A DNA stretch of 56,404 nt, counting the filler, from Dugesia japonica (taxonomy: Eukaryota): the NCBI GenBank assembly GCA_001938525.1. It is 3 parts of 3 records of this genome, joined end to end, with 100 filler letters (N's around TTAATTAATTAA, not from the genome) between each part and the next. Parts side by side here need not be neighbours in the genome. Positions count along the whole stretch, not along the records: positions 1 to 30,317 come from MQRL01596848.1; 2 more parts are not named here. One strand, written 5' to 3'. Made by a program: the position numbers and the translations under genes. Positions 5,053 through 30,317 of this stretch are shown in pieces; position 1 is the stretch's first letter, and each line of letters starts with the position of its first letter. The notes beneath the pieces are model-generated. The model did not search any database, had not been told where the DNA came from, and worked only from the letters and a program-made list of their open reading frames with translations.

Positions 5053-5073
5053 GTCATACAACAAATATACCTT
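5053..5073 (+). CDS. Micro-exon, 21 nt, phase 1 (xHTTNIP)
   Basis: ttttcaaAG|...|GTaaag; 50-nt intron to the next exon. Confidence 0.55.
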
Positions 5074-8000
5074 GTAAAGTTTTCAATTAATCCAAAATCT
5101 ATTTTATAATTGAATTACTGTAGATAATGATGGCGACAAAGCATATTTTGGACCTGGTAATTACATTTTATATCGCATTTTTATTTAGAAAAGTATATTT
5201 TTTTGTTTTCGTATACTACTGAATAATATTTTTTAAAATATTTTACATAAACATATTTTTAGAATATTTCAAGTTAATTCTTAAAGAAGAAAATTGTCGA
5301 AGCGTCAAATTACTAAAATCAACTAAAAAACAACATTTTGATCGAAGCTTTTTAATTTATTGAAACTTTAAAATCCTACAATTCTCGCAATTATTGTAGT
5401 TGTAAAATTTTACATAAGACTGAACAATTAATTTGAAGTTTGACACCATATCTAAGCTGTCAGTGGACATATATATGAAATCAAATATACATCTTCAAGC
5501 GTGAATTTTTAGCAATTAAAAATCGAAAATTCAAATCAATAAATAATCAAAATCCAGAGATATGACATTTTTTACATGTGAATAAATTTTTTCATGTTGA
5601 AAAGTTAACATTGAACAAAAAGTTGTTATCAAATTTAATGCCAAACTGGGAAAAAGTGAATCTGAAACATTCCAATTGATGCATCTGGTTTACAGTCATC
5701 TTTGTTTAAGCCGGTCAAATGTCTTTTAGTGAAACATGCATTTCTTGGAAGGTAGAGATTCATTGGAAGACGATAAACGTACGGAAAATTCGATTTCTTA
5801 TCGATTACAGGAAATTATAGAAAGAGTTTCTAAGTTCATGACAAACAATCGTTGTGCCTCATAGAGAATGATGNAAAAGGCTTAGATGGTAAACACATAA
5901 ACAATCCGAGCAGTGTTACACGAAAATTTGAAAAAATTTAAAATCTGTTCAAAATTTGTTCCGCGCTCCTTAATCAACGAACAAAATTTTAGTAGAACTG
6001 CACATTGCAAAAACATTAGTTAAGCTACTAAAAATGACAAACATTTTCTGAAACTAATTGTAACACGTGATGAAACACAATGCTTTCAATAAGACCCAAA
6101 AACTAAAAAGCAAAGTCCTGAATGAAAAACAAAGAACTCGTCTCAAACCAAGAAAATTTCCATCAAAAATCAAAACAATACTCATCGTTTTCTTCTAATA
6201 GTAGAGGTCTTATCCACAAAATATTTGCACCACCTTGATAAGCAATTAAAGTAAAGATGAAATAATTAATGACGTACTCACAAAGAAGGTGATAAATACA
6301 AAGTTGATAGAAACGTTGACAACACATTCTGATATTAAGATCACGGAAATGAGATCCCTAGAAAAGATAATGGAAGATAGAACACAGGCAATGAAGCCAA
6401 AACCGATAGTATCAATGAAATATTTGGCAATATGTTATTTTAATAGACAGAGAGGATTTCCAGAACTTCATAAAGAGAAACTCCAATAGGGACAATGTTA
6501 TTGCTCCGGAGAACATTGACATAAACGATACCATATAAAACAAATGTTTTATTGGTTTCAAATCTGGCCATAATTTTAGATCATGTTTGATTTTACAGGG
6601 TTCGTCTAGTAGAAAGAACACTAAAATTTTGTATATTCAAGACTAATTTGATGATTCAAAAGAAGACGAGGAGAGCGTGACAGGTCATGATGTAGTAATG
6701 GGAAAAACCAGAACGACTCAATTGCTTACATTTCGTTGATGGAATCAGTATAGAAAAAGGTAAAATAAATCGAAATGATGACGAAAGAGGAGAGATGTTT
6801 GTAAAAGAAGATGGGCGAGAGTAGAGTAGAGTAGATGTTAATGGAGTAAAGTTAGAGATTCAGAAGCTTTGGCGACAGTCATGAGTGAAAACTATGGGAT
6901 TAAAATTGGAAAACCGTTGCTGTCGATGTGCAATATCAGATTAATTGGAGCATTTAATAAGGTCGGAGAAAAACTTTTGGGTATAGCAGAATTAAGTATA
7001 CAGTGGAACAAGAAATTCAGGAAAATTAAAGTCATTATAGTTAGACAGATTAATACAATGGTATTAATACAATGCAAAGTTTTGGAGTAAAATTAACAGA
7101 AATAAATAACATTGAAAATGAGAGTCTGAAGATAACACTTTCTGATGAAGGTAGAGAAAATAACGCGTAGATATTGTTTAAAGGAATAGGTAACAGAAAA
7201 ATGGTTTCGTTGATCCAGAATTTTGGTGAGATATTCATGGCTTCAAAGTTCAATATTAGGCATAAGAAAAAAGTAATACATTAAATAAAAGTTATAGAAG
7301 AGCCAATGGTAAGGCACCCTAGAAGACAGTTGATGCGTTTAAAAGCAAAGTTGAGTAATGATTAAAGAATTAGCAAAGATTGGTGTGATCAGCAAATGTA
7401 ATAGTCCTTGGAATTCTCCATTAGTGATTGTGGGTAAAAAGGACGGCTCGATATGAATGTGCGTGGATTACAGACAAGGGAATTTGAGGATAGAAAAAGT
7501 CTGTTTTTCAATGCCAGATATTCAGTTATTATTAGATTGTTTATCTGGCTCGAAATTATTTTCATCGATTAATCTGAGACAAGCTTATTACTAAGTGGAG
7601 TTAGCGGGAAAGTCAAGTGATGTCACTGTTTTCAGTACAAAGGAAGGTTGATTCAGATTTAACCGAATGCCTTTTGGATTAGCTACCGTACCGGCTAGTT
7701 TTCCAAAGTTAATGCACGAGTTATTGTATATCTGGAGGATNTTCTGGTGTACGGAAAAACATTGGAGGATAACGACAGTCTTTAACAGGATCAGAAGATC
7801 GGGATTAAGAATAAGCCCGGAGAAATGTAGGTTTTATCAAAAAGAAGTGTTATTCTTGGGACATACAGTTAGTGCAACGTATATACGCACTAATGAAGTT
7901 AATATCCAGGAGATTACGAATGCTATAGTACCAAAATGTTCTTCAGAGCTCCATTAGTTTCTCTGAATAGCATACTATTACAGGCGTTTCATAGAAGATT

Positions 8001-11000
8001 ATGCAAAGATATCAGGTGATTTATATGAAGCAACTTCAAGTGGCAACAAATCGTTAGTTTGGACAGAAGCATGTCAGAGTAGTTTCAATGCGTTAAAAGA
8101 CAAGTTATGTAGTGCTTCAGTATTAGAATATTTCAGGGAGAATCCGATGTTTATTTTAGACACTGGCGCTAGTTTTGGGGCTGTCGGTGCAGTCCTTAGT
8201 CAATGTGGAGAGTCAAAGGAAGTGATAATAACGTATGGATCCAGACATTTGACAGTTCATGAAAGAGGATGCTGTATGACAAGGTAAGAACTATTAGCTA
8301 TACACGAATTTGTACAAAAATTCAAACAATATCTGTATGAAAATATATTTTTAGTAGGAACGGACCACAAAATGTTGGTGTTTCTGAACAAGACAAATAA
8401 ACCAATCAGTCCACAATTCCAGATATGGATGGCGAATCAGGGAGACTATGATTTTGAACTCAAGTATAGAAAAGGCGAAGAACACAACAATGCAGATGGG
8501 TTGTCGAGGCTAACGGAGAGTTTGTGTTCACAATGTAGCATGAAATATATAAATGCAAAAGAAGAAAAAGCCAGAGTGAAACATATCAATGGAATTCAAC
8601 ATGAGACCAATAGAATATCAACGATTTGACCGGCTCAGACAAAAGAATCAGCAATGTTGCAAGAAGAAGCTTTAAAAACTAAAAATAGTGAACAAGGAAG
8701 CTACTGGAATAAACTAAAGCACGAATTGAAAATAATCGATGATTTTATAGTAGTAGAAAGAGAAAAAAATTTTGTTAAGAATTTCGACAAGCATAGTTGA
8801 TAAAATGATAAAAAAAATTCATGAAGGTTTAAATCATGTGGGAAGGAAAAGTTATTTTCATACGTACTAGATGGATATTTCTGATCAGGGATGCGCGAGA
8901 CAATTAATGAAAGTATTGATAAATGCGAGATGTGTGCCAAAAGGAAAGTAGTACAAAGTCGTACAAAAGAAACACTTATACCGTGGAAAAGCCAAAGTTT
9001 TTGAGAACAAATCTTGGTGGGCATAGTTCATATAGAACAGTGCAAGTCTGGAAAGAAATATATAGTGTTAATTATTTATCGTTTTAGCAAGCTACTCAGC
9101 TTATTTGCAGTTTCAAAAATGGATGAAGAGACGGTTTTTATGATAATTTTGAGTAAACTAAAATCCATTCTGACTGACAGAAGAAAATTGTTTGAAAGTC
9201 AAATGATTGCAAATAAACTAGGAAAATTTAGAATTGTACAAGAATTTAGTTCCCCGTATCTACACCAGTCAAATAACGGATAATTCTAACAGTGAGGGAC
9301 ATGATTACTATATCAATAAAAGGGAAATGTAATGGGAAATATTGGGAGACATTATTACTGAGAGTAGAATTTAGCATTAATGCTACAATAAGAGTCAACA
9401 AAATTCTCTCCTTTCAAAATCGTATTTGGTTGAAAGATAAATCGGCATAATAAAGCGGAAACGCTCTTAAAAGAAAGGATAGACAGAGAAGAGATTATGC
9501 GACAAAAAATGGAAAATTTCGAGAAAGATAATCGAGGGCAAAGATAGTTTAAATAGGGAGAGTGGGTATGAGTCAGAGTAAAACCACACAAACAAAAGAA
9601 AAACGGTTTGCTGTATAATGGACTATACCAGATAAAATACAATATCTATAAAAGAAATTTTGAAAATAAATTAAGATTTCTAAAGAAATTGAAAAATTAC
9701 TTTATATACAAAAGACTTTGCAATTACTTTTATTTTTATGTTTATGCTCAGCAATATTACTACCACCACCAAAATGATTATGTTCTTGAACCCTTGTACA
9801 GAGATGACGGGCAGTCTCTCCAATGTATGTGGCATCACACCCATTACATTTAAATTGATAAACAAGGTTAGAACACAAACCAATTGGTGTATGGGATTTA
9901 TTAACAAAGCTATTAACAATCTTATGTGAAGAAGAGACAATTTTCAATAAAGGAAGATGCATTAGCAGCTTTCAGAATCGAATTCTTAAACTTTTTAAAA
10001 CCTTCAGAATAAGGAATCGATAAAACAAATGACCCCATACAATTTGATAAAATGTTATCAGATTCCGAATTATTCAATACAGTTTAAGTATTTTCATCGA
10101 AATGAATATTATTACCAACCAATGTTTTGTCAATTGTCTGCGAAGTTAATGAATTTAGAAATTGTTTATTAAATTCATTTGATTGCAGTAACTTTAATAA
10201 ATGTTCAATGCTTTAATGGATTTTGAATAAGTTGAGGACAACGACAAAGAACGAAATACTAAACCCTTTATCGTGTTCCTTTTATAAACAGGATCACAAA
10301 ACCTATTTGGGGTAGCATAAAAGCCAGTATCACTTTTCTTTCTGTATATTTCAGTTTCACAATGTGTTGATTTCCTTTCTATTAAAATATCCATAAAAAG
10401 CAAAATATCATTTCTTTCCTCGTCTACAGTAAATCTAATATTAGGATGTAACGAATTCAAAAAACTCTGGAAAGGCAAAACATATTCACGATTACCAAAA
10501 ATAAGGAAAACTTGGTCAACATATCTTTTGTAAGTAAGAGGCTTATTCAAAGAATACAAGTTCATTTGTTCTTCAAGCTTATTCAAGAAAATTGACGCTA
10601 ATGTCGGAGTCAAAGGAGAATCCATAGCCACTCCATCAATCTATTTATACCATTCATTGTTAAACAGAAACGAAAAATTAGCCGTTGCAAAAGTCAACAA
10701 TTCACGAAAAGCCGCTTTATTCAATTCAGAATGATCACTCGCATTATTCTCCCATAAATCACAACAAAGATCTATTGTTAGAAAAGATCTATAGTGAATA
10801 AGCTAAAAACATCAAAAGACACCATAACTTGACACCATAACTTAGACACCATAAACATTCTTTGATCACAAGTGGCTTGCGTTCATAAAATACCTAGAAA
10901 ATATACTAATTAATGTAATTGCATTTATTATAACATAAACAAATCCAGAAATGAAGGGTATTAAAATTTAAAGAAAATTTATATTGCAAATATCAATGAA

Positions 11001-14000
11001 ATTTCGTTGTGTCTGTTGTAAATGTTTTTGACTTTTCACGTCATTCAGTTCGCAGACAAATTAAAAATGAAAATAACTAAAAGATAATAAAAAGAGACAA
11101 TATTATTAAGATTTAATCAAAATAATGAAATGTTATGTTTCTAAATTTAGAATTCATACAAAAATAAATTATATTCAGGCTTTATTATTTCTTTCAATAC
11201 TTAGGAAAAGCGTATGAGTTGTTTCTTTTTTCAATTTATTAAAAAAATTACGCAATATAAATCTTTTATAAACATTACAACATTAATATATTTAGAATAC
11301 ACAATGTTTCGTTTTTTAATGTATAAATTCCATTTAGATATTTTACGAATGAGATTGATAAATAATAACGAAATTACTAAATTTACTATTTATTTTATTA
11401 AATGCAAAAAATTAATTGATTATTTATTAATTAATTATTTAAAAATATACATTTTTAAAATTTTGATTGTTGCACTGTTATTTAAAAAATAATTATAACT
11501 TATTTTAATAATTTTCTTTAATATAATAAAACTATTTCTAAAAAGCTTTCTTTTAATTACACATAATCTGTGTTTGGGTGTGTTTGAAAATTATACTTTT
11601 GATAAAACTAATGAGATAATATTAGTGTTTGATCAAATATGTGTACTGTTTAGAGCATAATTGTCCAAATCTTCAATCTTTTTTTAATTTTATGAACTTA
11701 TTCAAGGAGCACATGATCTCTTTTAGTTGTTTTCAATTGCAAATTTACTAATGAATGTTAAAGAAATGATTTCCAATTTAATAAATTAATGTAATTTAAA
11801 GAAATATTGGTAATAATTTTTTTTAATAAAAACCCAAAATAAATATTTAAACTGCTTGAAAGATCATAGTGCTTTGCGTGCGCATGATTTGGAGGAGGTT
11901 TTATTGCGCCCTCGAGCTTAAAAAGGCAGAACATCCCTGGTATAGAGCAATCGAATATTTATTAATAATATTGTTAGAGTTGTTCATTTTTATAAAAAAA
12001 GGAAATAAATAAAATTAATTAATTAATCAAGGACTGTAAACATCCTTGTTAAACTTATTGATTAACCCGCATAGTTAAACTATACTAGGTTTGGAGAACA
12101 TATCAAAGAATGGTTCAATAATTGAAAATTATCTTTAGAAAAAAAGAAACTAAATTAAAAAGATAAGCTGTGAATAATAAAATGAGAACCGAAATTATCC
12201 ATATCAAGCCACTCGAAAGGCTAAATTTGCAGGATTTTAAATTGATTATTTGTTCAACAGAACGCATTAAAATATCTCTGAAGTCATTAAAACCGGTATA
12301 TAAATGAAAACTAAACTGAAATTATGTTAGAGCAATTGTTCAAGAAATAAAATTCTTCTTCAAAATTTAAAAGTTACAAAAATAAATGAGTTTTTTTAAA
12401 AATATATTTGTAAATTATTTTAAGAAACTAACTTAGTACCTTCACATTAAAATAGTTAGGATTTAATTTAAGAATAAATATTTTATGTCTAATGGATAGT
12501 TTTGTATTAATTTATTATTCAGAAACAACCANNNNNNNNNNNNNNNNNNNNNNNNNNNNNNNNNNNNNNNNNNNNNNNNNNAATTTAAGAATAAATATTT
12601 TATGTCTAATGGATAGTTTTGTATTAATTTATTATTCAGAAACAACCAACATGTCCCAAAAAGTATTCAAAGAGTTCAGTACCGACGCACGAGTAGACGA
12701 AAATTCTGTGTGTGGCTTTATTTTCTGCGTGATAAAGAAAATCAACTTGCAAAGTGTAAGAAATGCGACAAAGAAATAAAATCACAAGGTGGCAGTACCA
12801 GTGGACTTCATACACATGTAAGAACAAACCATGAAATCGACTTGCTAAAGAGAAAATCGCCCCAAGACGCAACATCTTCATCGGTTTCGTTGCGATCGAC
12901 AAAATATCCCAAATCTTTGATCCCCGGTTTCTTCAAAAATCAACATGACAAGTTGTTGCCCGTAGTTTTATCTAGATTGACTGCCCTTGACGGACTGCCA
13001 TTTAGCATATTTGTTAAATCAATGAACTAAAAACAACACTAAAAGCTTGGGGGTTTGTTGTTCCGAAATAGGCGACGACAATTTGAAATTTGGTAGTCAA
13101 ATACGCAAACACAATCAGAGAGACGGTCATATCGAAGTTCATTCGTCTCCGATCGCAAGGAATGCGATTCAGTTTGACATTAAATGAGTAAATGTCAATT
13201 AAAAATCGTAGATATTTAAATGTCAACGTTCACATTGAGGACGAATTTTGGAGCCTTGGATTAGCTAGAGTTGTTGGTTGACTGTGTGCATAAAGTTAGT
13301 TCAAAAGATGTTGATGCAGTTTATGCTGAATTACGATTACGAATTGTGCATTACTACTGACGGAGCTTCTGTAATGCAAAAAGTGGGACGTTTAAGCAAT
13401 TGTGATCAACAGCTTTGCATTGTTCATAGCATTCAACTTGGTGTGCAAGACGTTTTTTACAAAAAACCGTCAACTTCTGCCAAAAAAGCTTGAAAAGAAT
13501 TTCCAATGACGAGAATAACAGTGAAATTGACGATGACGATGACAAAAATACGACCACTGACAATGACGCAAACATAAAAAATGATGATCAAGAAGACTTT
13601 TTCGGCGGGTTTCAAGTTGTGATGAGTGAGAAGGACAACACTATTGAACTGACTGATGATTTGCAGCCGATAATTGCTAAGGTGCGCAAAGTTGTAAAAT
13701 TGTTTCGCCGTTCTCCGACAAAAAATGATAAAACACTCCAAACATACACAGTAGACGAATTTGGTAAATCCTTTCCATTAATACTCGACTCCAAAACTCG
13801 TTGGAGTAACTTGCACACAATGTTGGAACGTTTCATGAAATTGAAAAATTGCATTCGCAAGTCATTGATTGGCCTTGAGTTCAAAATTGAGATAACTGAT
13901 AAGGAGTTCGACACAATTTCACCTGTTGTATCATGTCTCGCGCCAGTAAAATTGGCCGCGGAAACATTGTGCCGAAATGATGCGACATTGTTGTCAGCCG

Positions 14001-17000
14001 ATACAACACTATTGTTCATGGTAAATAACCTTGGAGTAACGGATTTAGCTGTTAAATTGAAAACTGCAGTGGTGATATGAATAAAAAAACGACAAACAAA
14101 CTTTTCCTAGCTTGCTGCGATATCTGCACAAAGATAATCAACGATACGAGAATTTGGATCCAGCACTGTCATTTGATCACCTTAGCAAATCAGCCATTGT
14201 AAATGCCATAGTTTGACTGAATGAGCGGCTCAATTAGCAAGCAGGCAAGCTTCTCCATTTGACCAGCGTTTCATCTGATAGCGATTTTGTTGACAGCACT
14301 GCAAACTTGACATTGAAGGAAAAGCTTGGCATGGCAATTTTGAATGATAAGTGTAAAAATAAGGGAAGATTGAACGTTTCAAAAGATTTATCAAAAACAA
14401 TCCGCAAGGAGATTGCAGTTTTTGAAGAAGCAGGAACTCGTGGATAATATTTGCGAAACTCTTACGAATACTTAAAAACTGTAAAGCCAACAAGTGTCGA
14501 ATCGGAACGTGGTTTTTCTGCAAGTGGCAACATTGTCACCAAATTACGATCATCTCTTGGTGATGACACTCTGAATGACCTTTGTTTCTTACGGGCATAT
14601 TTTACAAACGAGAAAAAAGCGTAAAATTATTAAAAATCTGTAATGTTGATATAAAATAAAAAGGTTTATTGAATCACTGTAAATTTTTACTATTTATTTG
14701 AGATAATAACCAAGTTATAATTTTTTAAGTTTCAATACCGGTGTTATACCGGTATTACCGGTATTGAAATTTTTCAGTACCGAAATACAGGTATTAAAAA
14801 TATGCAATTGCAATTATTGCGAGAATAATTGTTGGACTTAACAATTGATCGTTTTATATTAAATGAATTAAAAATATAGCCGGTATGGGATGCACTATTT
14901 TAAACCGAATACCTTTTACTTGTTATTGTAATTTGAGCTGTTTATATTGCTTTTGTAATATTGTAGAATCATCTTGTATATTTTATACATATGATTCACA
15001 AAAATATACTTCGATATCGGGCTATTAAAATTAAAATTAAAAAAGTCGACTTAACAACCATTCAAACATATTTTATAATTAATTGAGTAAGAATATTACA
15101 TGATAAGAGTAAACTAATTGCATAGTAAAGGAAATCTATTATTTTAAATTACCATTTAACTAAATTTGATTATATATTTTAATGGAATAATTTTAGATGG
15201 TACAGTACCAGTTTATCCAAGTATAAATTTTTTTATTTATTTATTTTTCATTAATAAAATAATCATTCAAATTAGTGCAAGATAAAAACAAAGTATTTAC
15301 GATTCCAAGTAATAATTAATATTCTTAAGTTCTAATTTCTTTTTAGAGATTTACATGGATAACTTCATTATAATTTATTTTATAATTTAGACTCACCATT
15401 ACTACACATAGCAAGTTCGATTTTAATTAGATTAAACTAATTAATTTTTGATTTAAAAAAACACCTCCTATTTAATGTTTAAAAATTGATATAGTATAAA
15501 AAGTGATACTCTAATTGGTAATTTTCATTTACTTTGTGATCATTAAAATAAAATAAAATATACATTTTTAATCTCTAGAAATTTATATTTTACTGAAATA
15601 TTCTTAAATTATTAATGTTTTTTTTCTCTAAGATGGATTTAAATATTCAAATAACTAGTTTTCTTCATAAAAACTATAAAAGTAAATTTTCACGAGAATC
15701 ATGAAATTACAGCGTAATTGTGTTTTTACGCTTTAATTAAAAAAACGTAATTAGAAAATTTAATTATTCAGAAATTAAATTTTCCATTGTAATTCAGATC
15801 AAGTAGCACCAGCAATACCTGTGGTGAAAAGTATAATTTTTGTAAATATTTTTTATAGAAATTAAATAATTAATCTTTTAGATTGTAAATTCAATCATAC
15901 AATAAATTATGAAAGTATAAAATTATTATTTCATTATTATATTAACATATTTATTCGTTTGAATATAATTTATTTATCCTAAACTTATACACAAATGCAC
16001 TGTAACATTATAAAAAAACTCCATTTTATGTAGTTAAATTTTAATTTACAAACATTTACTTAAGAATTCGTAATTATTTTTTTGTTATTTTTATGTTTTG
16101 CAAAAAACTGGCATGTATTGATGAAAACTACTAGCTGATAATAAATACGAACTGATAAAAATTTAATAAGAGAAGTCACATAAACGTGATGCCAGCAGAT
16201 AACTGTTGTTTACCTAAACTTACGAAAACGTGACTCCGTTGGTCAAAGTGCTAATAAATTATAATCGTATTTTTAATTATCAAAAATTTCAATAAATTAC
16301 TCTAAAATATTTTGAAAATATTCATAGTGAACTAAAACTTTTTAATGAAACGTCAATCTTATTAGAAATCAAAAACAAATAATTTTTATTTAAAAATGCT
16401 NNNNNNNNNNNNNNNNNNNNNNNNNNNNNNNNNNNNNNNNNNNNNNNNNNNNNNNNNNNNNNNNNNNNNNNNNNNNNNNNNNNNNNNNNNNNNNNNNNNN
16501 NNNNNNNNNNNNNNNNNNNNNNNNNNNNNNNNNNNNNNNNNNNNNNNNNNNNNNNNNNNNNNNNNNNNNNNNNNNNNNNNNNNNNNNNNNNNNNNNNNNN
16601 NNNNNNNNNNNNNNNNNNNNAATTTTTTAAAGATTATTTATTTAAAATGTTGAAAAAATTAATTAAATTAATATTAATTGTTTAATTAATAATTGTGTTT
16701 GTTTATGTGTGTAAATTAATTTAGTAAATCATGTTTGAAGATTAATACAAATTCTAAGAACATTAAAATTTAATTAAAATATTTGTAAGGAAGCATGTGA
16801 TTTAAAAAGAAGAAAACTAACAACTTAAATTTGTTAACTGAAAAAATATAGAAAAATTAACGTAACGACTAGAGGAATTTAAATTTTATAGATAATAGGG
16901 AACAGGTAAGAGTTTAAGTGAAATTGGAAAATAAAAATTAAAAATACAGATTTCAAAACGAAATTTGGTGAGGTTTATAAAAAAAGTATTGATTGAATTA

Positions 17001-18597: not shown

Positions 18598-18665
<68 letters not shown>

Positions 18666-18764
18666 NNNNNNNNNNNNNNNNNNNNNNNNNNNNNNNNNNN
18701 NNNNNNNNNNNNNNNNNNNNNNNNNNNNNNNNNNNNNNNNNNNNNNNNNNNNNNNNNNNNNNNN

Positions 18765-18837
<73 letters not shown>

Positions 18838-21800
18838 GAAATATTTAAAATTATAGCAATTTACAACAAATTCTTCAATTCTTAATTACCAATAATTTTA
18901 TTTGGTTAATTAGATTTTAAAAAGAAATGTTTATATTTTTGAATGTTAATATAGCTATATCGAAAAACGTGATCGTTTTAAAATTTTAAAATATTTGAAA
19001 TTAAATGTATTTGTTTAATTAATTCAAAAGATAAACATAACTTTAAATCTGTTTTATAAAATAATAATCGCTGTAAAATATTTTTTGTACATAGCAGCTA
19101 CCAGCTTTAATAATTTCCTTCATTGTTTCAATAGATGCATCCAATGCTTTACCCATACGAATATTTAGGAATTTTGGTAGCTCACTATTCTGAAATGTTC
19201 TTGTTTCATCAATATGTTTAAAATCTGTACGACTTCTATCCAGTATTTTAAAAAGATAATTATCACAAATATTTATGTCTGGTGAATAGGGAGGTTGACG
19301 AAGAAGTTTGACGCTTTTAGAGTCAAAGAATTCAATAGAATCGCGAATAATCTGATCGGCTTTGGTTATGTATAAGATACATATTTTGTGGGAGAAAACT
19401 TTGATGTTTTTTGAAGAAAGTTAATGAGATTTTGAAGAAATTGTATCTAAGCACTTATCGTTTCATTCCGTTCTATTATTTCAAAGTAATAGTACCACGT
19501 TTTGAAATAGAAATAATGACTGTAAGATAATTTTAGAAAGCAGATTTCAATTTTTTGTGTTTTGCGCGAAATTTATTGAAATCAGTTTTGTTAAATATTT
19601 AAATTTGTAATATAAAATAATTTATAATTAGTTAAATTATCATTTTCATTATTTATAAAAACAACTAAATATGTATTGAACTTATGGCAATTTGTTAATG
19701 TTAAATGAGTTTTGAGAATTTATTTCAAATAAAAACTATAAACATAAATTTGCTTTTTTCAAACAAATTTAAAAATTCATATTTAAAAGCGAAAAATACT
19801 AAATATCAGCAGTTGTTAAAATTTTTAATTTTAAAGATTTATTATCAAATTTTAAAATACCCATTTTATTTATTTACTTTTATATTTTTTTCTATTAGAA
19901 ATATTTTTTAAATTTTGAAGCTTTATTATCAAATTTCAAAATACACTAAAAATATTAATTATATTTATTTACTTTTATATTTTATTCTTCTGATATAAAT
20001 TTTAAATACAAATTTGACTTTAATAAATTTCGCCTTAAAACACAAAAAATTTAAATCTGTTTTAAAACTATCTTATAGTTAATATTCTTAAAATTTTCAA
20101 ATTTCGGTTTGTCAACAAAATATATTTTTTAATGTATTTTTAATTATTAAAATTTTAGATAAAATAAGAGATTTAAAATTTTAAATAGAATAAACTAATG
20201 TCAATGAAATGCTTTTTTACTGTATTTTAAAATTTGACGTTAATAAAATTTTAAATTTGAATATTTTACAAAATGCTGATATTTGATATTTTTCGCTTTG
20301 AATATGAATTTGTAAATTTGTTTGAAAAAAGCAAATTTATATTTATAGTTTTGTTTGTGAATAAATTTTCTATGGAATTGAGTTTTGATATTAATAATCC
20401 GATAAGTACTTCAAACTCATCTAACAATGTCTATGTACTTCTTTTCCATCGTTGATCTGACATGAGTCTGAGAAGGACCATATCAACTAGCAACAGCTTC
20501 TTCGGTTAAGCAAGTACCAATTTTGTTATTTGCTTTAATTCTTCGGCAATAAAAAACCTTTTCGTCAACAGTTACAAGGCTTAGTCTACCCAACTTTTTT
20601 TTGTAATAAATCAATTATTTAATTACATCGATCAAGATATTTTATCTTTTGTGCATTCCATAATAATCTGAAATTAATTTATAAAACATAGATTTAAAGT
20701 TACGTTTACCTATTCAATTAATTAAACACAATTTTAATTTGAAATATTTAAAATTTAAAAACGATCATTTTTTCGATATAGCCCATATCTCTACAATATT
20801 GTGCAATTAATATAATAAAAATTCATTAGACATAAATGTTATTACACCTATGCCCCGATTTACATAGTACTTTCTTTTACAAGATTTCGTTTTTACATAA
20901 TTTTCCAAATAACAATTTTCAAATAAACTAGTAAAAATGAAGATTTCAACTGCGAATAAATTTCTACAATAGTTTTTAAATCCGTGATTTACCATTTTGT
21001 ATGCACAATAATACTTCCTACGTATTCAAGTAAATTATTGCAATAAATTTAAAGCAATAGAAAATTATACATAATTGTGTTTTATTTAATAATAATTCTT
21101 TAAAACTTCATACTTACTAGTTAGTGATAAGCGATGATATTTTTTCTAGCAGTTTTTTAAGTTAATAAAAGCTTTTGGATTTTTCATGCCAAAAAAATTT
21201 AAAAAGTAGAAATGAAAAGAAACAAAAATTAAAATTTCAGACCGTCNNNNNNNNNNNNNNNNNNNNNNNNNNNNNNNNNNNNNNNNNNNNNNNNNNNNNN
21301 NNNNNNNNNNNNNNNNNAAGACTGCATTAGAAAAAGTGTAGCAGCTGAATATTGTACTTCATATATAAGAGATGTCACAATGAGAAATATGGAAAGGCAT
21401 TAATAATATGACTAGAATACCAAACTCAAAAGCGAATTTCAATTTATACTAATGTCTTTAAAAATAAAGCTTTGAGGATGTATGAAACAATTGCCATCTA
21501 CTTCTTCGAATAAAAAAAACCTGTCTTTTCCAGCCAGTCATAGTTGATTTGAAAGATTCAAACAACGATATACTTTACATAATCTAAGACTGAAAAGTGA
21601 GCTAATATCGGTTCAAATTATCGCTATCGATTCCTACACTTCAGATCAGGTCATCAATGCTGACAGAACGACGTTATTTCGGAAAAATGGCAGAACAATT
21701 TGATTAAAGCTGAATAATCGGTAGGTGGTCATCACGCAGCAAATAGTTGAGTAACAATTCTTTTCAGGTGATCGTATAAAGAAACTATTATTTATTAACA

Positions 21801-24800
21801 AATCAAAATTTTCCCGCTCGTTTAAATAAAAAAATATCAATAACCTTCATGTTTATTTGATGGCTAATAAAAAAGCATGGATTATTGCCACACTATTAAT
21901 GAATGGTCTAATACTTTTTTTGTCCTAAACTATAAAGATATTTAAGTAGAAATTAACCAGATCATCCTCAGGACTTACAACACAAAAATGTAACACTTGT
22001 ATTTCTACGCAAGAATATGACTTCTTTGTTGCAGCCGTTAAATCAAAGAATAATTTACACTTTAAGACAATGTACATCAAGCAAACCTTCAAGTATATTT
22101 TAGAAAAAATGAAAATGGTGAATCTCTTACAATTATAGATGGTTGGAAAAAATTTACAATCTTTAATTGCTTGAAGCATGTCAGCGTGTCTTATACTGAG
22201 ATGAAGAAATCAACGCACCATGCCTGTTGGAAAAAGGTACAGGCAGCTGACGGTTCAAGTTTAGTATTGGAGCAATTTTATTCTCATGTAATTAAGTTGG
22301 CACATACAATATGAAGTGAAAGTTTTGAGGACTGTGCTGAGAAAGATATTATAGAACTAATGGCTAACAAAGAACTAGATAGAGATGACTTAATTAACAT
22401 GATTAGCAAAACAAAGAATCGTCAAAGTGATACTGTTGAAGAGGAACTTAAACCAGTTGAGTTCATATCAAAAACCATCAGTAAAAAACCTGAATTAGGG
22501 CTAAAATTGGGTTATCATTTTGCACAAAATGACAGTAATGTTTCAAGTTTCATTTTATTTTTATTTTCACAGAAATTTCTTGAGTTAGTTTCTAAAATCA
22601 ATTAATAATTTATGTAATTAATTTATTAATTATTAATTATGTCAACAATTTTCTGGCAATTTTTAACCCCCCTTCTCTCTTGTCAAAGTTTCAGTGACCT
22701 TTTTTACGCCATTCTCCCTTTTCAGTTTCGCTCTAATTTGATTCGATGGGGCGATGCAAACATTAGTGATTTTGAAAGGATTACTATTTTGGAAATCATT
22801 TTTCTTTCTGTTTTAGAGTTCTTTCTTGACCAATACCTTGTCTCCGATTTTGAAATCACGTTGGTCTCGTTTATCATTTTTGAAACTGGCCATTCTATTA
22901 GCAGTAATCTATAAATTCTTTCTGACTTTCTTTGTAATTTTGGAATCTAATAAAATTTGGTGATTCATTTCTGAATGTTGGTGTATCTTGTAACCAAATA
23001 CGGTTTCACAAGTCGAGAATCTCGTCCAATTTTGTTAAGCTGCGTTAATACTAAACTCAATTCTCGGAAGTAAGTCATGCTAGTTTTCTCTTCACAACAT
23101 CNTTTTAAAGAATCAATGATCATGTCACGGATGGTTCTCATCACTCTTTCTACTAGACCGTTGGACTGATGTTGGTACGGATAACTAAATTCATGTAAGA
23201 CCGCCAAATCTTTCCACTTCTGTTGAAGCCATGTGCTCTCAAAATTTTTTCCACTGTCGGTCAAAATACTTATTTATCTTCCAAATTTATATATCCAGCT
23301 GTTCATAATTATTATGAAAATTGATTGACAATGCATCTTAAACAATTCACTCCAACGAACCAACTTGATAAAGCGATCAATGATAATCAATGCCGTTTCT
23401 TCTCGGAATCAATATTTCTTTTGTACGAGTCGGATCTATTTTTCTTATAGTTCAAACAATACAAGCTTTCAAACATGAGCTGATTGAACTCCACATTGAT
23501 GACCAGAATTTTTCTAGTATTAAAATNNNNNNNNNNNNNNNNNNNNNNNNNNNNNNNNNNNNNNNNNNNNNNNNNNCTTCCAAATTTATATATCCAGCTG
23601 TTCATAATTATTATGAAAATTGATTGACAATGCATCTTAAACAATTCACTCCAACGAACCAACTTGATAAAGCGATCAATGATAATCAATGCCGTTTCTT
23701 CTCGGAATCAATATTTCTTTTGTACGAGTCNGATCTATTTTTCTTATAGTNCAAACAATNCAAGCTTTCAAACATGAGCTGATTGAACTCCACATTGATG
23801 ACCAGAATTTTTCTAGTATTAAAATAAGAATTTCCATCATCTTTCTTATAACCAGAAAATTGTTTGCTACATTAAGACTATCTTATCAGTGCGTGTAATG
23901 AATAATTTTCTATATAGATATTATTTAAAATATAAAACAAATTTGTATAAGGTTAACAATTCCTTTCTTGTCAAACAGTATCCTAGTTCATGAGTGGACA
24001 AATGCCCGCATCCATTTACAAAAACAACCTTAGTACCATTCTCTCTCATTTGATATAGTACTGTTTTTATGGCTCCAAAATTAGTATCTGTATTCAGCAC
24101 AAAAACTCAATCCTTCCTAGGAAAGTCGAATATTAGTGCATTGCATAATTCTTTAGATTTAATAACTTTGCTGACACCGATTGGTCTATTGCAAAACTTT
24201 GCATAATAATGCTGCAATTTCTTCATATCCGTGAATAAATTTTCGATAATAGTTTGTTAATCCCAAGAAAGAACGCAGGTGAGAAACACAAATAGGAGAC
24301 TCTGCTTTAAAAATTTCTTCAATTTTGTTTTTTTTGTTTTTACTCCTTCAACACTCACTGTGTGTCCCAGAAAAATTAATTCTCGTTGATGAAATTTACA
24401 TTTTCCCAGATTTATCTTTAATTGAGCACTACTAATTTATGGACAATCTTACTCCAATATATGGAGAGCTATAAACCATAATATCTTCAAGATAAACCAG
24501 TACACTGTTGAAAAAAAGGCCTTTTAGTAGTTCATGTATTAGTTTCTGAAACGTTGTTGCTGTTGTCAATCTAGTAGGCAAATGAATGAAACAAAACTGA
24601 CCTTGTTTGATACCAAAATCTGGAACCAACCTTTACTTTTCTGACAGCTCCACTTGATAAAACGCTTGACCCAAATCTATTGTTGAAAAATGTTTGGAAT
24701 TAGTCAAACAGTCAAATAGCATCTGCATCTTTTGCATAGGAAATGTAAACTTCTCAAACTACTTGAAAATAATTTAGGACCTACAACTTTTCTCTATGTT

Positions 24801-27800
24801 TCTTCATTCAAATTATTCATGGGAACCATTTATTATTCTGGTTCTTTGTAAATACATATCACTGACATTCTTCAGGACTTCAATGTTGTCTCCAGAAGTG
24901 GGCATGACAGAAAAAGATTATCATGTTTCGCACAAATCAAACATTTGTTTTTCAATGAACAGTGCATTCTCAGATGGTTTCCTCCGCGACATCAAAATCA
25001 CTGACCAAATTGAAGAAATTCATCTTTACTATCTAAAAAATCTCTACATTTATTATATATTCGTCTAGCTATGTGTTTCATGGAATACAGTGAGATATCT
25101 CTCCGTCTGGACTCAAGATGATGTATGGGTGCAGCCTTTTGTTCATTTTGCATTTTAAAATCCCCAATGTTAAGGTGATCATTATATGATTGTGAGTGTT
25201 CAAAAATGAATCGCTGGTTCATTCAATCTTAACCAAAATTTCTTTGTGGTTTTTGTCTATGATCTTCCGATTGGGATAGCTTTTCTGTACCATGTATGCA
25301 CAACTGTATTGGTACACTGTGTTTACCTGAAATTCATCCTTTTTAGCTTCTGATCACGTTTTCATAAAGTTTATCCAAACTGCGAATATCTTTTACTTGC
25401 ATATTTGGTTCGGTGATAAGAGCTTCTTTGAGTCCAGCACTTCTAGCGCGTTTTGCAAAATAATCATTGACAATTTCTTGTTTGGACAATCCAAAATCCA
25501 ACACACTAGTTAACAGATTTTAGACTCGAATTTTGAAGTTAGCAAATCTCTCATCATGATTTTGTTTTACGTTTGCAAATTCCATAAAAAGATCTGTGAT
25601 TGATTTCTTTATCATAAAATTTTCTATAAACCACGCACTTGCTTCTTTTTGTTATCGTTTCTTATTTGAAACTTTTTCACAAGGCTGCAGCCTCTTTAGA
25701 AAAAAGCAAATCAAAGACTCGAGTTACGCATAATCATTGATATTAAGCCATTCTTATATATCATTTAACCAATGTTCGGTTTCGTCGTAGTTTCTGACAT
25801 CAAAANNNNNNNNNNNNNNNNNNNNNNNNNNNNNNNNNNNNNNNNNNNNNNNNNNNNNNNNNNTTTTTTCTGATTGATATTTATGACAATATTTTTTTTG
25901 GCTTGGTCGACAGTAAAATCATTCTTACTATTTGATTCACACATTTAGTAATCACACTAAAACTGAAATCTATTTAATAAAATAAAACAGAATTATGTAA
26001 TATATAACTATTACAAAACTATTGTTTAATTTCTGATGCATGCGCTAAAGGCAGAATCACCTTATCGTTGGTAAGAGCTAAATTAGTTAAAAATTTAAAA
26101 TTTTGGGCTGTAGCCAGGCCAATTGGTGTGTATCGTCTCAACAAATCTATTTTCTTCGATTAACTAAATGTATCGTAAAAATTGTTAACGTCAATTTATC
26201 TTTGACAATTTAATTTAATTTTAATATTTTATATATATTTTTCAAGTATTATTAATTTAAAAATGAACAAAATCATAATTAAACTAGAAAATTCACATTC
26301 AAAATGAAACAATAAAACATTAAAAATCAAAATGAAACATCATCAAAAGTTATTGTTTGAAAATATTATACATATTTGAATATATATATATATATATATA
26401 ATGTACAAATTTAGACGACAGAAGTGATAAGAATCATTGAAATAATATTTCCTGAAAACATAAAATATTATAGTTTAATGAAGTAAAACTGTCGAATATT
26501 TTATGTTTATGCTGAAAACAATTTCGTTTTTAATCCCTGTAATATCTGATAGTATTAAATGAAAAATTAGATAGTTAAAGAGCATTATATTTCACTTTAA
26601 ATTCGTTTAAAATCTAATTTTATTGCGATAAAATCTCCAAACTATACTTTTCATAATTATTTGTTGATCAGCAACTGAACGAAAATAATGTTAACAATTT
26701 CGGACATTTTAATCTATATGTTGAGCATAATTGCTTTTCTCAAACTTATGATTAATTGGATTTTAAATTTTACAAAATATTGAATCAAAATCTAATTGCA
26801 ATATTTTCTGTCTAGTATCATTGAATAAAATTTTTATAAAACATGTACTTCAAATTTATAGTATTCAATTTTTATCTGATATTTTAATAGTTTATTCCTG
26901 ATTTATTTCAAAAAAAATATTATTGTATTGAGTTGAATTTCGACTTTTAAGACTTCAGTAATCAAAACACTCTTTTTTTGTATAAATAAATGTTGCCTGA
27001 AAATAAAGATTTTCCTATTGTAGGGTATGTAACCCCAACTCGTAATAGTCAATAAAAAAAACAAAATTAATAATAAGCAGAAAATATTGACGATATATAT
27101 TTCCTCAAAATAATAAATAATTTACAATAGTTTTAGTTATCACAAATAAATTATGATTCATAATTCACAAAACCTGACTTTATTATTATGAAAATAATAT
27201 ACATAATTTTATATAATTTAAAATAAATTCAATATTCAAAATTGTGAAAAAGTAAAAACTTTTCTAATGGCTACTGTTTTCATTTCATATTTTTAATTTA
27301 TTTTATATTGACTTTTTTATGAATGTTGGAATATATTCACTAAGAAATAGTTTTAATTCAAAAGTTTGAACTTCATTAATTAGAAATATAAACAAATACT
27401 CCACCACAAATGAATTTAGATGAAGTTACAATGACACTTTTCGAAGTTAAATTTTTATAAAATGATTTAATGAAATACATTGACTACACTTCGCAAATAT
27501 TTGTCTTCATGTCATCAGTCAATATAACGAAAGGTTTTATTAAAACTGCAATTCTCGCTAATAAAACTTAATTTGGAATTATTGAAACGTGAAATAGTCG
27601 CTGATAATTGTCAATTTTAGTATTACTACCACAAAATTTATGGACAAATCTTAAAGTATTGTTTTTCATATTAACTTGTAATTTAATTAAAGAAATTTTA
27701 ATGTTTTTCTAAGTTTATTTTCTACATTACTAAACAAGAAAAACATTCAACATTTGTAAGAATGAGATAAATTGTCTGAGATTATTAGACCTATAATATT

Positions 27801-29867
27801 CATGGATAAGGGAATGAATAAGTAGTCTTGTTTTTAGTAGGTCTGATCACTGAGCTGAAATAATATTTTATCCAGGCAGTTTTTTTTGTTTTTATCCGAT
27901 ACAAACAAGAGAAAAATGCTTGAATACAAATAAATTTTTTAATGACAATATCTGTCATATTAGTCTCGCAATTCATTTTTTATGTGCAACCATTTTTTAA
28001 TATAATTGAAAGGTGGAATAAGTGGATTGTATAAAATCAAGAGATATAAAGACAAAATAGATCAAGGTGTAAAAATAATCAAGAATAAGATATTTAATAT
28101 TAATTTATTATATCGATAAAACAAATGAAAAATATTTTAGAAGCTCAAAAATCTCACTAATTAATGTAATTTATACTTATATGCTGTCTTATTTTAGATT
28201 TCAAAGACATACACAACCAATTAAAATGTATNNNNNNNNNNNNNNNNNNNNNNNNNNNNNNNNNNNNNNNNNNNNNTAGTAAATGAAAAACAGCCTTCGA
28301 AATTTAAAAGTACTTAATTAAATTCTTAATGTCATACCAATATCATTAATATTTGTTTTACTATAGAACTTAAGAAAGGAGATAAAATTAGTAATTTCTT
28401 TTTATTTTCAATTTATAATTATTTTAGAATATTTACATTAAATTAAAATAAAATTTATTTTAATAAAAAAATTTCAGCATTAATAATATACTTTGTAAGA
28501 ACACGAAAAAATCAATATTATAAAGTTCTATTTATAATGTAATATTNGTCTTTTTCATTAATGAAAAATACAATCAATCAACTGACAAATCAATTTAACA
28601 AACATGTACAAATACAATCATATAAATCCAAACTCACATTACATTAATATCTTTCTTCATTTTTCTACATAAAAAGCAACTATTGACATAGGGCAATAAA
28701 TTGGAAATTTTAATTATAATTACATTATTATATTCCACTCTTCTTATCTGATTTTAACTATATTGTATATTATGAACTATTTTGTTCTATTATAACTAAT
28801 AAACTCAACTATTTTTAATGAAACTTATTATTTATTTCATATGAACCTTTCAACTTATGGTTCTGTTTATTTTTAATATTTTTAAATTCAAAGACAATTA
28901 CTCATCTTAAATAATCTGTATTTGATGTTCATTATTATAATGTTCATTTTATTAATATTTANAACATTATTTTTATTTTTATTCTATTCTTTTTGGTCTA
29001 GATTATTTCGTACATGTGCTCATCAATAATCTAATTAAACTTTCTTTCAATATGTTTGGTCGAATAAAATTACTTTTACAACAGAATTGTGTGACAAATC
29101 CATAATTACGGTTCTGAAATCATTTTATATTTATGCTCATTAATCATGTGATCTTAATATAATCGAAGCGTTGTTTCTCTAGTTTTTTTATTCCGGTGTC
29201 TACTATCCTTTTTAACTTTTAGTAGAAAAACCGATTTCCTTTAAGATTCTCTGATTGTATATTCTATGAGCCAAGGATCCTTTATTAAAGTATCTAAAGT
29301 AGTCTCTGTGATATTTCATATTTTTCCTCTAACTTTAGTAAATCTAGGAATTGAGAGAGCATTTATATTCATTCATTCATGTTTCGTTTTTCGAGAATTT
29401 CTTTTTGTGTATTTCGATATATTGAGAATCAAAAAACTAAAGTTTTAAATCACAAGATTTATAATCTCAAAATTAGAGAAATATCTCGAGATTTTCGAGA
29501 AAGAATTTCTCGAGCAGAAACTCTAGGCATATAGTTTGATTCTTTCTCTTTCTCCAAGTTTCTAGAATAAAAAGAGCTACACTTTATTGCGAAAATGCCA
29601 GATTGCACCTAGCTAAAGTAGTGTCGCTAGTAATAAAAATCTAGTAACCCACGTATAAACTTAATCTGTTGTAATATTTAGCTGTTAGAATCAATTTTAG
29701 AAATAAGAGACACTAAAAAAATAATTTTTATATCTAATTTTATTTTTACTTCAGATGTTGCTCGAGCAGGTCGAGATTTTCGAAGTCAGTTTTTTTTATT
29801 TTCACTATAAATTGTACAATTTCTGTTGATTTAGAATGTGATGGTGAAGATATGATAAATAATTTAC
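5053..29867 (+). CDS. Candidate micro-exon gene: at least 14 symmetric phase-1 micro-exons, first and last exons not identified
   Basis: Exons 5053-5073, 5124-5156, 15197-15220, 15276-15308, 15391-15414, 15798-15830, 15882-15914, 18096-18113, 27024-27041, 28198-28227, 28280-28309, 28367-28390, 29755-29784, 29835-29867 join to xHTTNIP-YNDGDKAYFGP-DGTVPVYP-MQDKNKVFTIP-NSPLLHIA-NQVAPAIPVVK-NCKFNHTINYE-NKLVGL-GYVTPT-HFKDIHNQLK-LNEKQPSKFK-KLKKGDKI-NVARAGRDFR-KCDGEDMINNL. Confidence 0.65.
5124..5156 (+). CDS. Micro-exon, 33 nt, phase 1 (xNDGDKAYFGP)
   Basis: tactgtAG|...ctg|GTaatt; GC higher than flanks. Confidence 0.7.
5413..6245 (+). mobile_element. Decayed mariner transposon (5' part)
   Basis: EQKVVIKFNAKLGKSESETFQLM; KFVPRSL; IVTRDETQCFQ*DPKTK (first catalytic D motif, normally TGDETW). 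Confidence 0.85.
6250..9640 (+). mobile_element. Decayed Ty3/Gypsy internal region (gag-PR-RT-RNaseH-IN)
   Basis: SPWNSPLVIVGKKDGSI*MCVDYRQ; RMPFGL; PEKCRF..VLFLGH; ILDTGASFGAVGAVLSQ; GTDHK; YRKGEEHNNADGLSR; integrase SSPYLHQSN; GPY/F-like GLYQI. Confidence 0.92.
9645..10835 (-). mobile_element. Penelope-like retroelement fragment (RT plus GIY-YIG)
   Basis: AMDSPL..LASIFL, YKRYVD(Q)VF, LNSLHPNIRFT, EIYRKKSDTG (10194-10631); NLVYQFKCNGCDATYIGETARHLCTRVQEH (9702-9962). Confidence 0.93.
10818..10856. repeat. Three-copy 13/14-bp microduplication (GACACCATAACTT) at the Penelope 5' truncation
   Basis: gacaccataactt gacaccataactta gacaccataaac. Confidence 0.7.
12651..14897 (+). mobile_element. hAT DNA transposon, decayed transposase
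   Basis: BED finger VWLYF..AKCKKC..GSTSGLHTH..NH; CITTDGASVM; CIVHSIQL; LDSKTRWSN; PTSVESERGFS dimerization motif; subterminal ATACCGGT repeats; right end GGGATGCACTA. Confidence 0.92.
15197..15220 (+). CDS. Micro-exon, 24 nt, phase 1 (xGTVPVYP)
   Basis: ttttAG|...|GTataa; 55-nt intron to the next exon. Confidence 0.65.
15276..15308 (+). CDS. Micro-exon, 33 nt (27 nt from an alternative in-frame acceptor at 15282), phase 1 (xQDKNKVFTIP)
   Basis: aaattAG|...|GTaata. Confidence 0.55.
15391..15414 (+). CDS. Micro-exon, 24 nt, phase 1 (xSPLLHIA)
   Basis: aatttAG|...|GTtcga (weak donor). Confidence 0.5.
15798..15830 (+). CDS. Micro-exon, 33 nt, phase 1 (xQVAPAIPVVK)
   Basis: aattcAG|...|GTataa; 51-nt intron to the next exon; GC higher than flanks. 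Confidence 0.7.
15882..15914 (+). CDS. Micro-exon, 33 nt, phase 1 (xCKFNHTINYE)
   Basis: cttttAG|...|GTataa; open in phase 1, stop in phase 0. Confidence 0.6.
18096..18113 (+). CDS. Micro-exon, 18 nt, phase 1 (xKLVGL)
   Basis: ttttAG|acaaattagtcggtctag|GTAAGT consensus donor. Confidence 0.7.
18598..18836. repeat. (AAT)n microsatellite spanning a gap
   Basis: Seen directly. Confidence 0.97.
18954..20782. repeat. Two diverged copies of one repeat family in inverted orientation (arms 18954-19065/20672-20782 and ~19714-19825/20262-20370)
   Basis: gctatatcgaaaaacgtgatcgttttaaa... vs reverse complement gctatatcgaaaaaatgatcgtttttaaa...; aaaactataaacataaatttgcttttttcaaacaaattt is matched on both strands. 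Confidence 0.75.
19070..19530 (-). mobile_element. Tc1/mariner transposase C-terminal remnant
   Basis: KSVKLLRQPPYSPDIN (YSPDL-type motif). Confidence 0.7.
21318..22540 (+). mobile_element. Decayed pogo/Tigger-like DDE transposase
   Basis: QVINADRTTLF(W)K (normally QVFNADETGLFWK); WMANKKAWI; LQHKNVTLVFL; many stops. Confidence 0.7.
22740..25805 (-). mobile_element. Decayed Ty3/Gypsy internal region
   Basis: Integrase TDSGKNFES..SYPYQHQSNGLVERVMRTIRDM; RDFKIGDKVLVK; RT FSTIDLGQAFYQV, TFQKLIHELL..VLVYLEDIMVYS; gag remnant at 25250-25800. Confidence 0.9.
27024..27041 (+). CDS. Micro-exon, 18 nt, phase 1 (xYVTPT)
   Basis: ttcctattgtAG|ggtatgtaaccccaactc|GTaata. Confidence 0.55.
28198..28227 (+). 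CDS. Micro-exon, 30 nt, phase 1 (xFKDIHNQLK)
   Basis: tattttAG|...|GTat, then a gap. Confidence 0.6.
28280..28309 (+). CDS. Micro-exon, 30 nt, phase 1 (xNEKQPSKFK)
   Basis: (gap)tAG|...|GTactt; 57-nt intron to the next exon. Confidence 0.55.
28367..28390 (+). CDS. Micro-exon, 24 nt, phase 1 (xLKKGDKI)
   Basis: ttactatAG|...|GTaatt. Confidence 0.6.
29755..29784 (+). CDS. Micro-exon, 30 nt, phase 1 (xVARAGRDFR); an internal alternative donor gives an in-frame 15-nt form
   Basis: tttttacttcAG|...|GTcagt; 50-nt intron to the next exon. Confidence 0.72.
29835..29867 (+). CDS. Micro-exon, 33 nt, phase 1 (xCDGEDMINNL)
   Basis: gatttAG|...|GTatgt. Confidence 0.72.
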
Positions 29868-30317
29868 GTATGTATTTGTAAATTTTATAAATAAATTTAA
29901 TTTAAATATTGAAATTATGATAATAAATTTGTTTTCAATTTTATATTATTTAAAATTGAAATTCTGATTTATACATTCTTAATAATATTGTAAAGAAGTG
30001 CAAAAATTTTGAATTTCTTTTTTTTACAAATTTTAGATAGATAATTTCCAAAATACTCCACGAAACTTCTAATTACTTATTAAAGACAGAGCACCATCAG
30101 TAACGCAAACCATCTTATATTTTAGAGGAATTTTATTTCTCTAAGTAACAACTTCTTTTTTACTTCTTGCCAATATAAATATATAAAGATAAAGAACAAA
30201 CATTTTTTGTTCTCCATTTGGTTAATACCTGCCTTTGTTCATCTTTAGACATTTTATAAATGGAATAAGGTAATGATACATTTTTAAGCAAGCTTGATAT
30301 TTGGGTTCCCCATGAAC

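What the first reader, a model, noticed from the sequence alone, without database searches (positions are those of the whole stretch)
5053..29867. Hidden micro-exon gene: at least 14 symmetric phase-1 micro-exons scattered among TEs
Seen: 14 AG...GT segments of 18, 21, 24, 30 or 33 nt. All are multiples of 3 and stop-free in phase 1 despite the extreme AT content. Several are GC-richer than their flanks, and most lie in pairs or triplets separated by 50-57-nt introns (5074-5123, 15221-15275, 15831-15881, 28228-28279, 28310-28366, 29785-29834). They splice into one open frame of about 128 aa with no family I recognise. Established: this is the architecture of Schistosoma micro-exon genes (MEGs), where symmetric exons are skipped combinatorially to diversify secreted host-interface proteins. 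Inference: a MEG-like diversifying gene that ORF finders cannot see. In-frame alternative sites (acceptor 15282, donor 29770) would add variants. The exons were picked by eye, so some selection bias is possible.
Basis: partly seen in the sequence, partly recalled or inferred. Interest (0 to 1): 0.88.

Follow-up and report, generated by a model that had tools for sequence, protein, structure and literature searches.

The report
Secreted-protein gene built from micro-exons
Spread over 25 kb of transposon debris in an AT-rich animal genome is a gene for a small, probably secreted protein made of a signal-peptide exon and about 13 tiny exons in one reading phase, a layout known from blood-fluke and aphid gland genes; expression and exon skipping are not yet shown.

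Summary
The 14 segments exist and carry a coding signal. In phase 1, GC at codon positions 1/2/3 is 0.50/0.32/0.16 (permutation p 0.00025). A blind exon-short intron-exon rule finds 4 symmetric pairs on the + strand, all stop-free in phase 1, against 0.4 in shuffles.

Correction: the first segment is not a micro-exon. It ends a 67-nt first coding exon (ATG 5007) that encodes a signal-peptide-like start. A strong acceptor at 30037 followed by a stop may end the gene. The model is 15 exons and 145-162 aa. It meets the published structural rule for flatworm micro-exon genes (MEGs) and scores 0.9998 on the aphid bicycle-gene classifier.

Not shown: expression or skipping (four RNA runs gave no exon reads or junctions over 28277-30317; strain or tissue may differ), one transcript across six gaps, the organism, and homology. 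One single-exon skip makes a stop. The host is probably not Schistosoma; a planarian is my best guess, by inference only.

Verdict: a real MEG-type gene; family membership and diversification are untested.

The parts
5007..5073 (+). First coding exon: ATG, 22 codons plus 1 nt, 13-residue hydrophobic core then a short polar stretch (signal-peptide-like), phase-1 donor
   Evidence: max Kyte-Doolittle over 10 residues 3.95; none of the other 13 exons has an upstream in-frame ATG with a hydrophobic core; about 0.5 such starts per shuffled strand
5124..5156 (+). Micro-exon 2, 33 nt, after a 50-nt intron
   Evidence: acceptor score 10.0; only donor within 60 nt
15197..15220 (+). Micro-exon 3, 24 nt
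   Evidence: GC 0.38 against 0.06 in flanks
15276..15308 (+). Micro-exon 4, 33 nt, after a 55-nt intron; in-frame alternative acceptor at 15282
   Evidence: acceptor weak
15391..15414 (+). Micro-exon 5, 24 nt, after an 82-nt intron (less sure: GTTCG donor)
15798..15830 (+). Micro-exon 6, 33 nt
   Evidence: GC 0.42 against 0.10
15882..15914 (+). Micro-exon 7, 33 nt, after a 51-nt intron; first Cys and a Tyr
18096..18113 (+). Isolated micro-exon 8, 18 nt, consensus donor
27024..27041 (+). Isolated micro-exon 9, 18 nt (in-frame alternatives: acceptor 27009, donor after 27047); less sure
28198..28227 (+). Micro-exon 10, 30 nt
28280..28309 (+). Micro-exon 11, 30 nt, after a 52-nt intron that is mostly masked; skipping it alone makes a stop
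28367..28390 (+). Micro-exon 12, 24 nt, after a 57-nt intron
29755..29784 (+). Micro-exon 13, 30 nt; in-frame weak alternative donor after 29769
   Evidence: GC 0.47 against 0.15
29835..29867 (+). Micro-exon 14, 33 nt, after a 50-nt intron; second Cys; 55% identical to exon 7 with Cys at the same place
30037..30144 (+). Candidate last coding exon. T-rich acceptor at 30037 (stop ends 30044), tandem acceptor 30041 (stop ends 30072), or acceptor 30086 (stop ends 30144, hydrophobic tail)
   Evidence: no RNA cover; unresolved
5157..15196 (+). 10-kb intron with mariner, Gypsy, Penelope-like and hAT remnants
18114..27023 (+). 8.9-kb intron with mariner, foldback element, pogo-like and Gypsy remnants; holds four assembly gaps

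Best explanation
One protein-coding gene, about 5007-30100 on +, for a small (145-162 aa), lineage-specific secreted protein. Exon 1 supplies a signal peptide. About 13 internal exons of 18-33 nt, all flanked by phase-1 introns, supply short interchangeable modules: Pro-rich near the start, Lys-rich later, two Cys in look-alike exons. Shown: the exons, their coding bias, one shared phase, their order and strand, the hydrophobic start. Inferred: minimal introns are removed first by intron definition and fuse the pairs and triplets; the blocks are then joined across long transposon-filled introns; variation comes mainly from skipping isolated exons or whole blocks and from in-frame alternative sites, as in flatworm MEGs, and over evolution from exon duplication and loss. 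The product is probably a gland or surface secretion of restricted tissue or stage. The host is most likely a planarian (about 55%, inference).
For: Codon-position bias p 0.00025 and 14/14 stop-free in phase 1. Blind pair test 4 against 0.4. Signal-like exon lies first, in frame, with a phase-1 donor and a 50-nt intron. 87 of 91 joins stay open. MEG rule met and bicycle classifier 0.9998 (rules). All gaps lie in introns and three have overlapping or microsatellite flanks. Planarian genes have a 45-85-bp intron peak with intron-defined splicing proposed (PMC13594981).
Against: No exon reads or junctions in about 6,900 million letters from four RNA runs. No homologue for exon 1. Skipping exon 11 alone makes a stop. 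Six gaps interrupt the model. The last exon is ambiguous. The organism is not identified. No signal-peptide predictor was available, and T-rich DNA translates to hydrophobic residues easily.
Confidence: 0.55

Rival explanations
1. Same gene, but spliced constitutively, as described for bicycle genes. The single phase reflects origin by exon duplication and gives evolutionary, not transcript-level, flexibility.
For: The bicycle paper never mentions alternative splicing (0 occurrences) for the same structure. Paired exons share minimal introns. Some skips give stops. Exons 6-7 and 13-14 look like duplicates.
Against: In-frame alternative acceptors and donors at exons 4, 9 and 13; weak splice sites (+5 G in 4 of 14); isolated 18-nt exons between long introns are typical skipping candidates (own knowledge).
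Confidence: 0.22
2. The clusters belong to two or more small genes (tandem paralogues) or to mis-joined contigs.
For: A second ATG-hydrophobic-GT stretch at 28925-29009 lies before exons 13-14. Exons 6-7 resemble 13-14. Three gaps show no flank overlap.
Against: One such hydrophobic start is expected by chance about half the time. No convincing last exon or first exon lies between the earlier clusters. All exons share strand and phase.
Confidence: 0.12
3. A once-coding gene that is now silent or decaying, or is private to the assembled strain.
For: No RNA. Only two runs hold the 3' stretch (0.53 and 0.19 of its words); the other indexed runs of the same species label hold none. One strong non-3n candidate exon, 16892-16905.
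Against: No stop in any exon and a clear third-position bias. Tissue-restricted expression is usual for such genes.
Confidence: 0.08
4. Chance AG..GT segments picked by eye from AT-rich DNA.
For: Loose rules give decoys (5 on the minus strand; 2 pairs), so one or two unpaired exons may be false.
Against: The codon-position bias was not a selection criterion (p 0.00025); blind pair excess; in-frame signal-like first exon.
Confidence: 0.03

Closest known systems
Schistosome and tapeworm micro-exon genes (MEGs; PMC4350168, PMC4413821, 10.1101/2020.04.08.031872)
   Same: Coding region mostly tiny symmetric exons, signal peptide first, no known domain, transposon-rich introns, small product.
   Different: Exons here come in pairs or triplets across 50-57-nt introns rather than being spaced by 0.2-5 kb introns (10.1101/2023.06.21.545858). 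The genome is more AT-rich than Schistosoma. Skipping, gland expression and sequence homology are not shown.
Bicycle/unicycle genes of aphids, phylloxerids and scale insects (10.1101/2020.10.28.359562; 10.1101/2021.09.24.461719)
   Same: 5-25 micro-exons that start at codon position 2 (the same phase as here), signal sequence, long introns; classifier score 0.9998.
   Different: Only two Cys, so at most one C-Y-C order. 50-nt introns and TA-poor DNA fit aphids badly (own knowledge). Salivary expression and host not shown; the classifier was trained on an aphid, so a pass outside Hemiptera does not imply homology.
Regulated cassette micro-exons of ordinary planarian genes (PMC4978528)
   Same: Frame-preserving exons of 27 nt or less exist and are regulated in planarians.
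   Different: Those are single cassettes in conventional genes; here nearly the whole mature protein is made of micro-exons.

Membership tests
Flatworm MEG | At least 7 exons, at least half under 70 nt and divisible by 3, run of 4 or more | tested here: met
   15 exons, 13 consecutive 3n micro-exons (rule)
Flatworm MEG | N-terminal signal peptide | tested here: met
   Exon 5007-5073, judged by hydropathy and position only; no signal-peptide predictor available
Flatworm MEG | Isoform pool by exon skipping | tested here: inconclusive
   No reads on exons and no joints; 87 of 91 joins open
Flatworm MEG | Platyhelminth host | tested here: inconclusive
   Organism name coded; composition, intron size and transposons fit a planarian but do not prove it
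Flatworm MEG | Sequence homology to a described MEG family | not testable with these tools
   Exons too short to search; exon 1 found nothing; joined search left out on instruction
Flatworm MEG | Expression in glands or exposed epithelia | not testable with these tools
   No tissue-resolved, strain-matched RNA
Bicycle genes | Many micro-exons starting at codon position 2 | tested here: met
   13 of 13 internal exons
Bicycle genes | Published gene-structure classifier above 0.72 | tested here: met
   0.9998 for three endings; 0.998 with paired exons only
Bicycle genes | One or more widely spaced C-Y-C motifs | tested here: inconclusive
   Two Cys (exons 7 and 14) with Tyr between; motif spacing is loose and phylloxerid and coccid homologues lack it
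Bicycle genes | Aphid, phylloxerid or coccid host with salivary-gland expression | not testable with these tools
   Organism coded; 50-57-nt introns argue against (own knowledge)

The most novel reading that the evidence does not exclude
This is a MEG-type, exon-skipping secreted-protein gene in a free-living planarian. The architecture would then not be a parasite invention for the host interface, but an older or repeatedly evolved way to vary gland secretions, missed in planarian annotations because no exon reaches normal size.
Probability: 0.35. Interest if true: 0.78.

Novelty: new member of a known kind. Interest (0 to 1): 0.6.

Why it matters
MEG and bicycle genes are read as adaptations of parasites and plant feeders, and a 2020 tapeworm genome paper calls curating MEGs across flatworm lineages a high priority. 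A well-delimited gene of this build in what may be a free-living flatworm makes that question testable: is the design tied to parasitism, and does it give isoform diversity or only fast evolution? My paper searches found no report of such genes in planarians (the library is incomplete). It also shows a class of genes that ORF finders and short-read mapping miss, and a structure-based genome scan could count them.

Tried and rejected
RNA: one search and one read-laying were allowed. I used 28277-30317, beside the masked stretch 28232-28276, with four RNA runs. 20 reads were laid, all partial; by their bins they fall on T-rich intron pieces and a repeat at about 29450-29590; there were no joints and no depth at 30002-30317. 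This is weak evidence of absence because indexed runs of the same species label share 0.00 of the words. Organism identification through transposon proteins failed: hAT relatives are 79-85% identical at DNA level but come from unnamed assemblies; Penelope-like and Gypsy queries found nothing. No Rfam match. DeMarco 2010 is not held, so MEG features come from later papers. Rejected: 5053 as a true acceptor; Schistosoma as host; tandem-repeat origin of the exons. No N stretch was filled or looked up. One early script printed translations of neighbouring exon pairs; these were not searched or saved, and once a secreted product was suspected I kept exons apart with X at junctions.

Full report
Setting. 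The piece (1-30317) is 27.5% GC with no CpG depletion (observed/expected 0.94) and is mostly decayed transposons. There is a hAT element at about 12643-14800 (zf-BED; relatives 79-85% identical in unnamed assemblies), Gypsy pieces (RVT_1), and by inspection a Penelope-like element, two mariners and a pogo-like remnant. No long host ORF and no Rfam family is present. The exons lie in the very AT-rich islands between these elements.

Gaps first. All six assembly gaps and the masked stretch 28232-28276 fall inside introns of the model, so they do not affect the frame unless exons hide in them. Two 50-N gaps have duplicated flanks of 67 and 249 nt, which suggests overlapping contig ends; one sits in an AAT microsatellite; three show no overlap. 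Continuity is therefore plausible but not proven. I did not fill or look up any N.

Observation. To get past selection by eye I ran two tests. First, a fixed rule (acceptor, 12-45-nt exon, 45-62-nt intron, 12-45-nt exon, donor) gave four symmetric pairs on +, all stop-free in phase 1 and none in phases 0 or 2. Local shuffles gave about 0.4, one of 300 reached four, and the minus strand gave two. Second, GC by codon position in phase 1 is 0.50, 0.32, 0.16, the pattern of coding DNA in an AT-rich genome; random phases reach this with p 0.00025, or 0.003 for the 11 paired exons alone. The exons are coding-like beyond chance. The three unpaired ones are less certain, because a loose single-exon rule yields five decoys on the other strand.

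New anatomy. The first segment has a poor acceptor, and its frame is open upstream to ATG 5007. Exon 5007-5073 encodes Met, a 13-residue hydrophobic run and a short polar stretch, and ends in phase 1 before a 50-nt intron. None of the other 13 exons has such an upstream start. Shuffles give about 0.5 such starts per 30-kb strand, so finding one in frame in front of the first cluster is unlikely by chance, although T-rich DNA favours hydrophobic codons and no predictor was run. At the other end a T-rich acceptor at 30037 is followed by a stop in phase 1, with alternatives at 30041 and 30086. The model has 15 exons and 145-162 residues; introns are 50, 10040, 55, 82, 383, 51, 2181, 8910, 1156, 52, 57, 1364, 50 and about 170 nt. 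Exons 1-4 each end in a Pro codon. Exons 7 and 14 are both 33 nt, 55% identical, with Cys in the same place, and each is the second of a pair, which points to growth by exon duplication (inference).

Expression. The run search on 29660-30317 found one holder at 0.53 of the words, one at 0.19, and none on record as RNA. The same species label has RNA or probable-RNA runs from nine studies, and the indexed ones hold none of the words. Laying four RNA runs (about 6,900 million letters) on 28277-30317 gave 20 partial reads, no joints, and no depth on exon 11 or the candidate last exon. The gene is silent in those samples, tissue-restricted, or too different in those strains; the data cannot tell which.

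How it probably works. Shown: exon positions, a single phase, coding bias, a signal-like start. Inferred: the minimal introns are removed by intron definition (proposed for planarians in PMC13594981), fusing pairs and triplets, and the blocks are then joined over long transposon-filled introns. Because every internal exon is 3n and in phase 1, 87 of 91 joins stay open. Four give a stop, including skipping exon 11 alone, so skipping cannot be fully free. Isolated exons, whole blocks and in-frame alternative sites (15282, 27009, after 27047, after 29769) are the likely sources of variants. I give 0.55 to this reading, 0.22 to constitutive splicing, 0.12 to several genes, 0.08 to a silent gene and 0.03 to chance.

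Comparison. It works like a flatworm MEG: tiny symmetric exons, signal peptide, transposon-rich introns (PMC4350168), and it meets the operational MEG rule of the tapeworm genome paper. It fits aphid and coccid bicycle genes as well; their micro-exons start at codon position 2, and the published classifier gives 0.9998. Membership of either family is not shown: host, homology, gland expression and skipping are open. Exon 1 had no protein match, and the joined search was left out on instruction.

Host. Tool names are coded and transposon searches did not reveal it. Low GC, 50-57-nt introns, weak donors (+5 G in 4 of 14), AAT repeats and the transposon mix fit a planarian such as Dugesia (short-intron peak 45-85 bp; low GC). 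They fit Schistosoma and aphids less well (own knowledge), and an AT-rich beetle or fly is not excluded. I put a planarian at about 55%.

Verdict. A real, previously invisible-type gene model of a known architecture: a new member of the MEG/bicycle kind. Interest 0.6. If it proves to be a skipping MEG-type gene in a free-living flatworm (probability 0.35), interest 0.78.

Noticed in passing
window 16892-16905 and 16950-16985: A 14-nt AG..GT segment with a very strong donor, then a 44-nt gap and an 18- or 36-nt phase-1 open segment. The 14-nt piece would break the frame; it may be a decayed exon, a poison exon or an assembly slip.
   Followed up: partly
window 5263-5295: Further 33-nt, phase-1, stop-free candidate exon 106 nt after exon 2; low GC, uncertain.
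   Followed up: partly
window 28925-29009: Second ATG with a long hydrophobic run and a phase-1 donor, upstream of exons 13-14; within chance expectation, but could start a separate small gene.
   Followed up: partly
window 12643-14800: hAT transposon with BED finger, 79-85% identical at DNA level to copies in ENA sample ERZ25073822 (L001, L002) and two JGI metagenomes (L003, L004); possible related host or horizontal transfer.
   Followed up: partly
window 19714-20370: Foldback element of about 660 nt with long imperfect inverted arms; parts resemble 2480-2617 and 363-420.
   Followed up: no
window 18954-19065 and 20673-20782: Inverted repeat of 115 nt (86%) bracketing a decayed mariner; likely its terminal repeats.
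   Followed up: no
window 29450-29590: Repeat element that draws partial RNA reads in two runs, showing that those samples share this repeat family though not the exons.
   Followed up: no
window 12465-12648 and 23278-23825: 67-nt and 249-nt direct duplications on both sides of 50-N gaps: probably unmerged contig overlaps, not biological repeats.
   Followed up: yes
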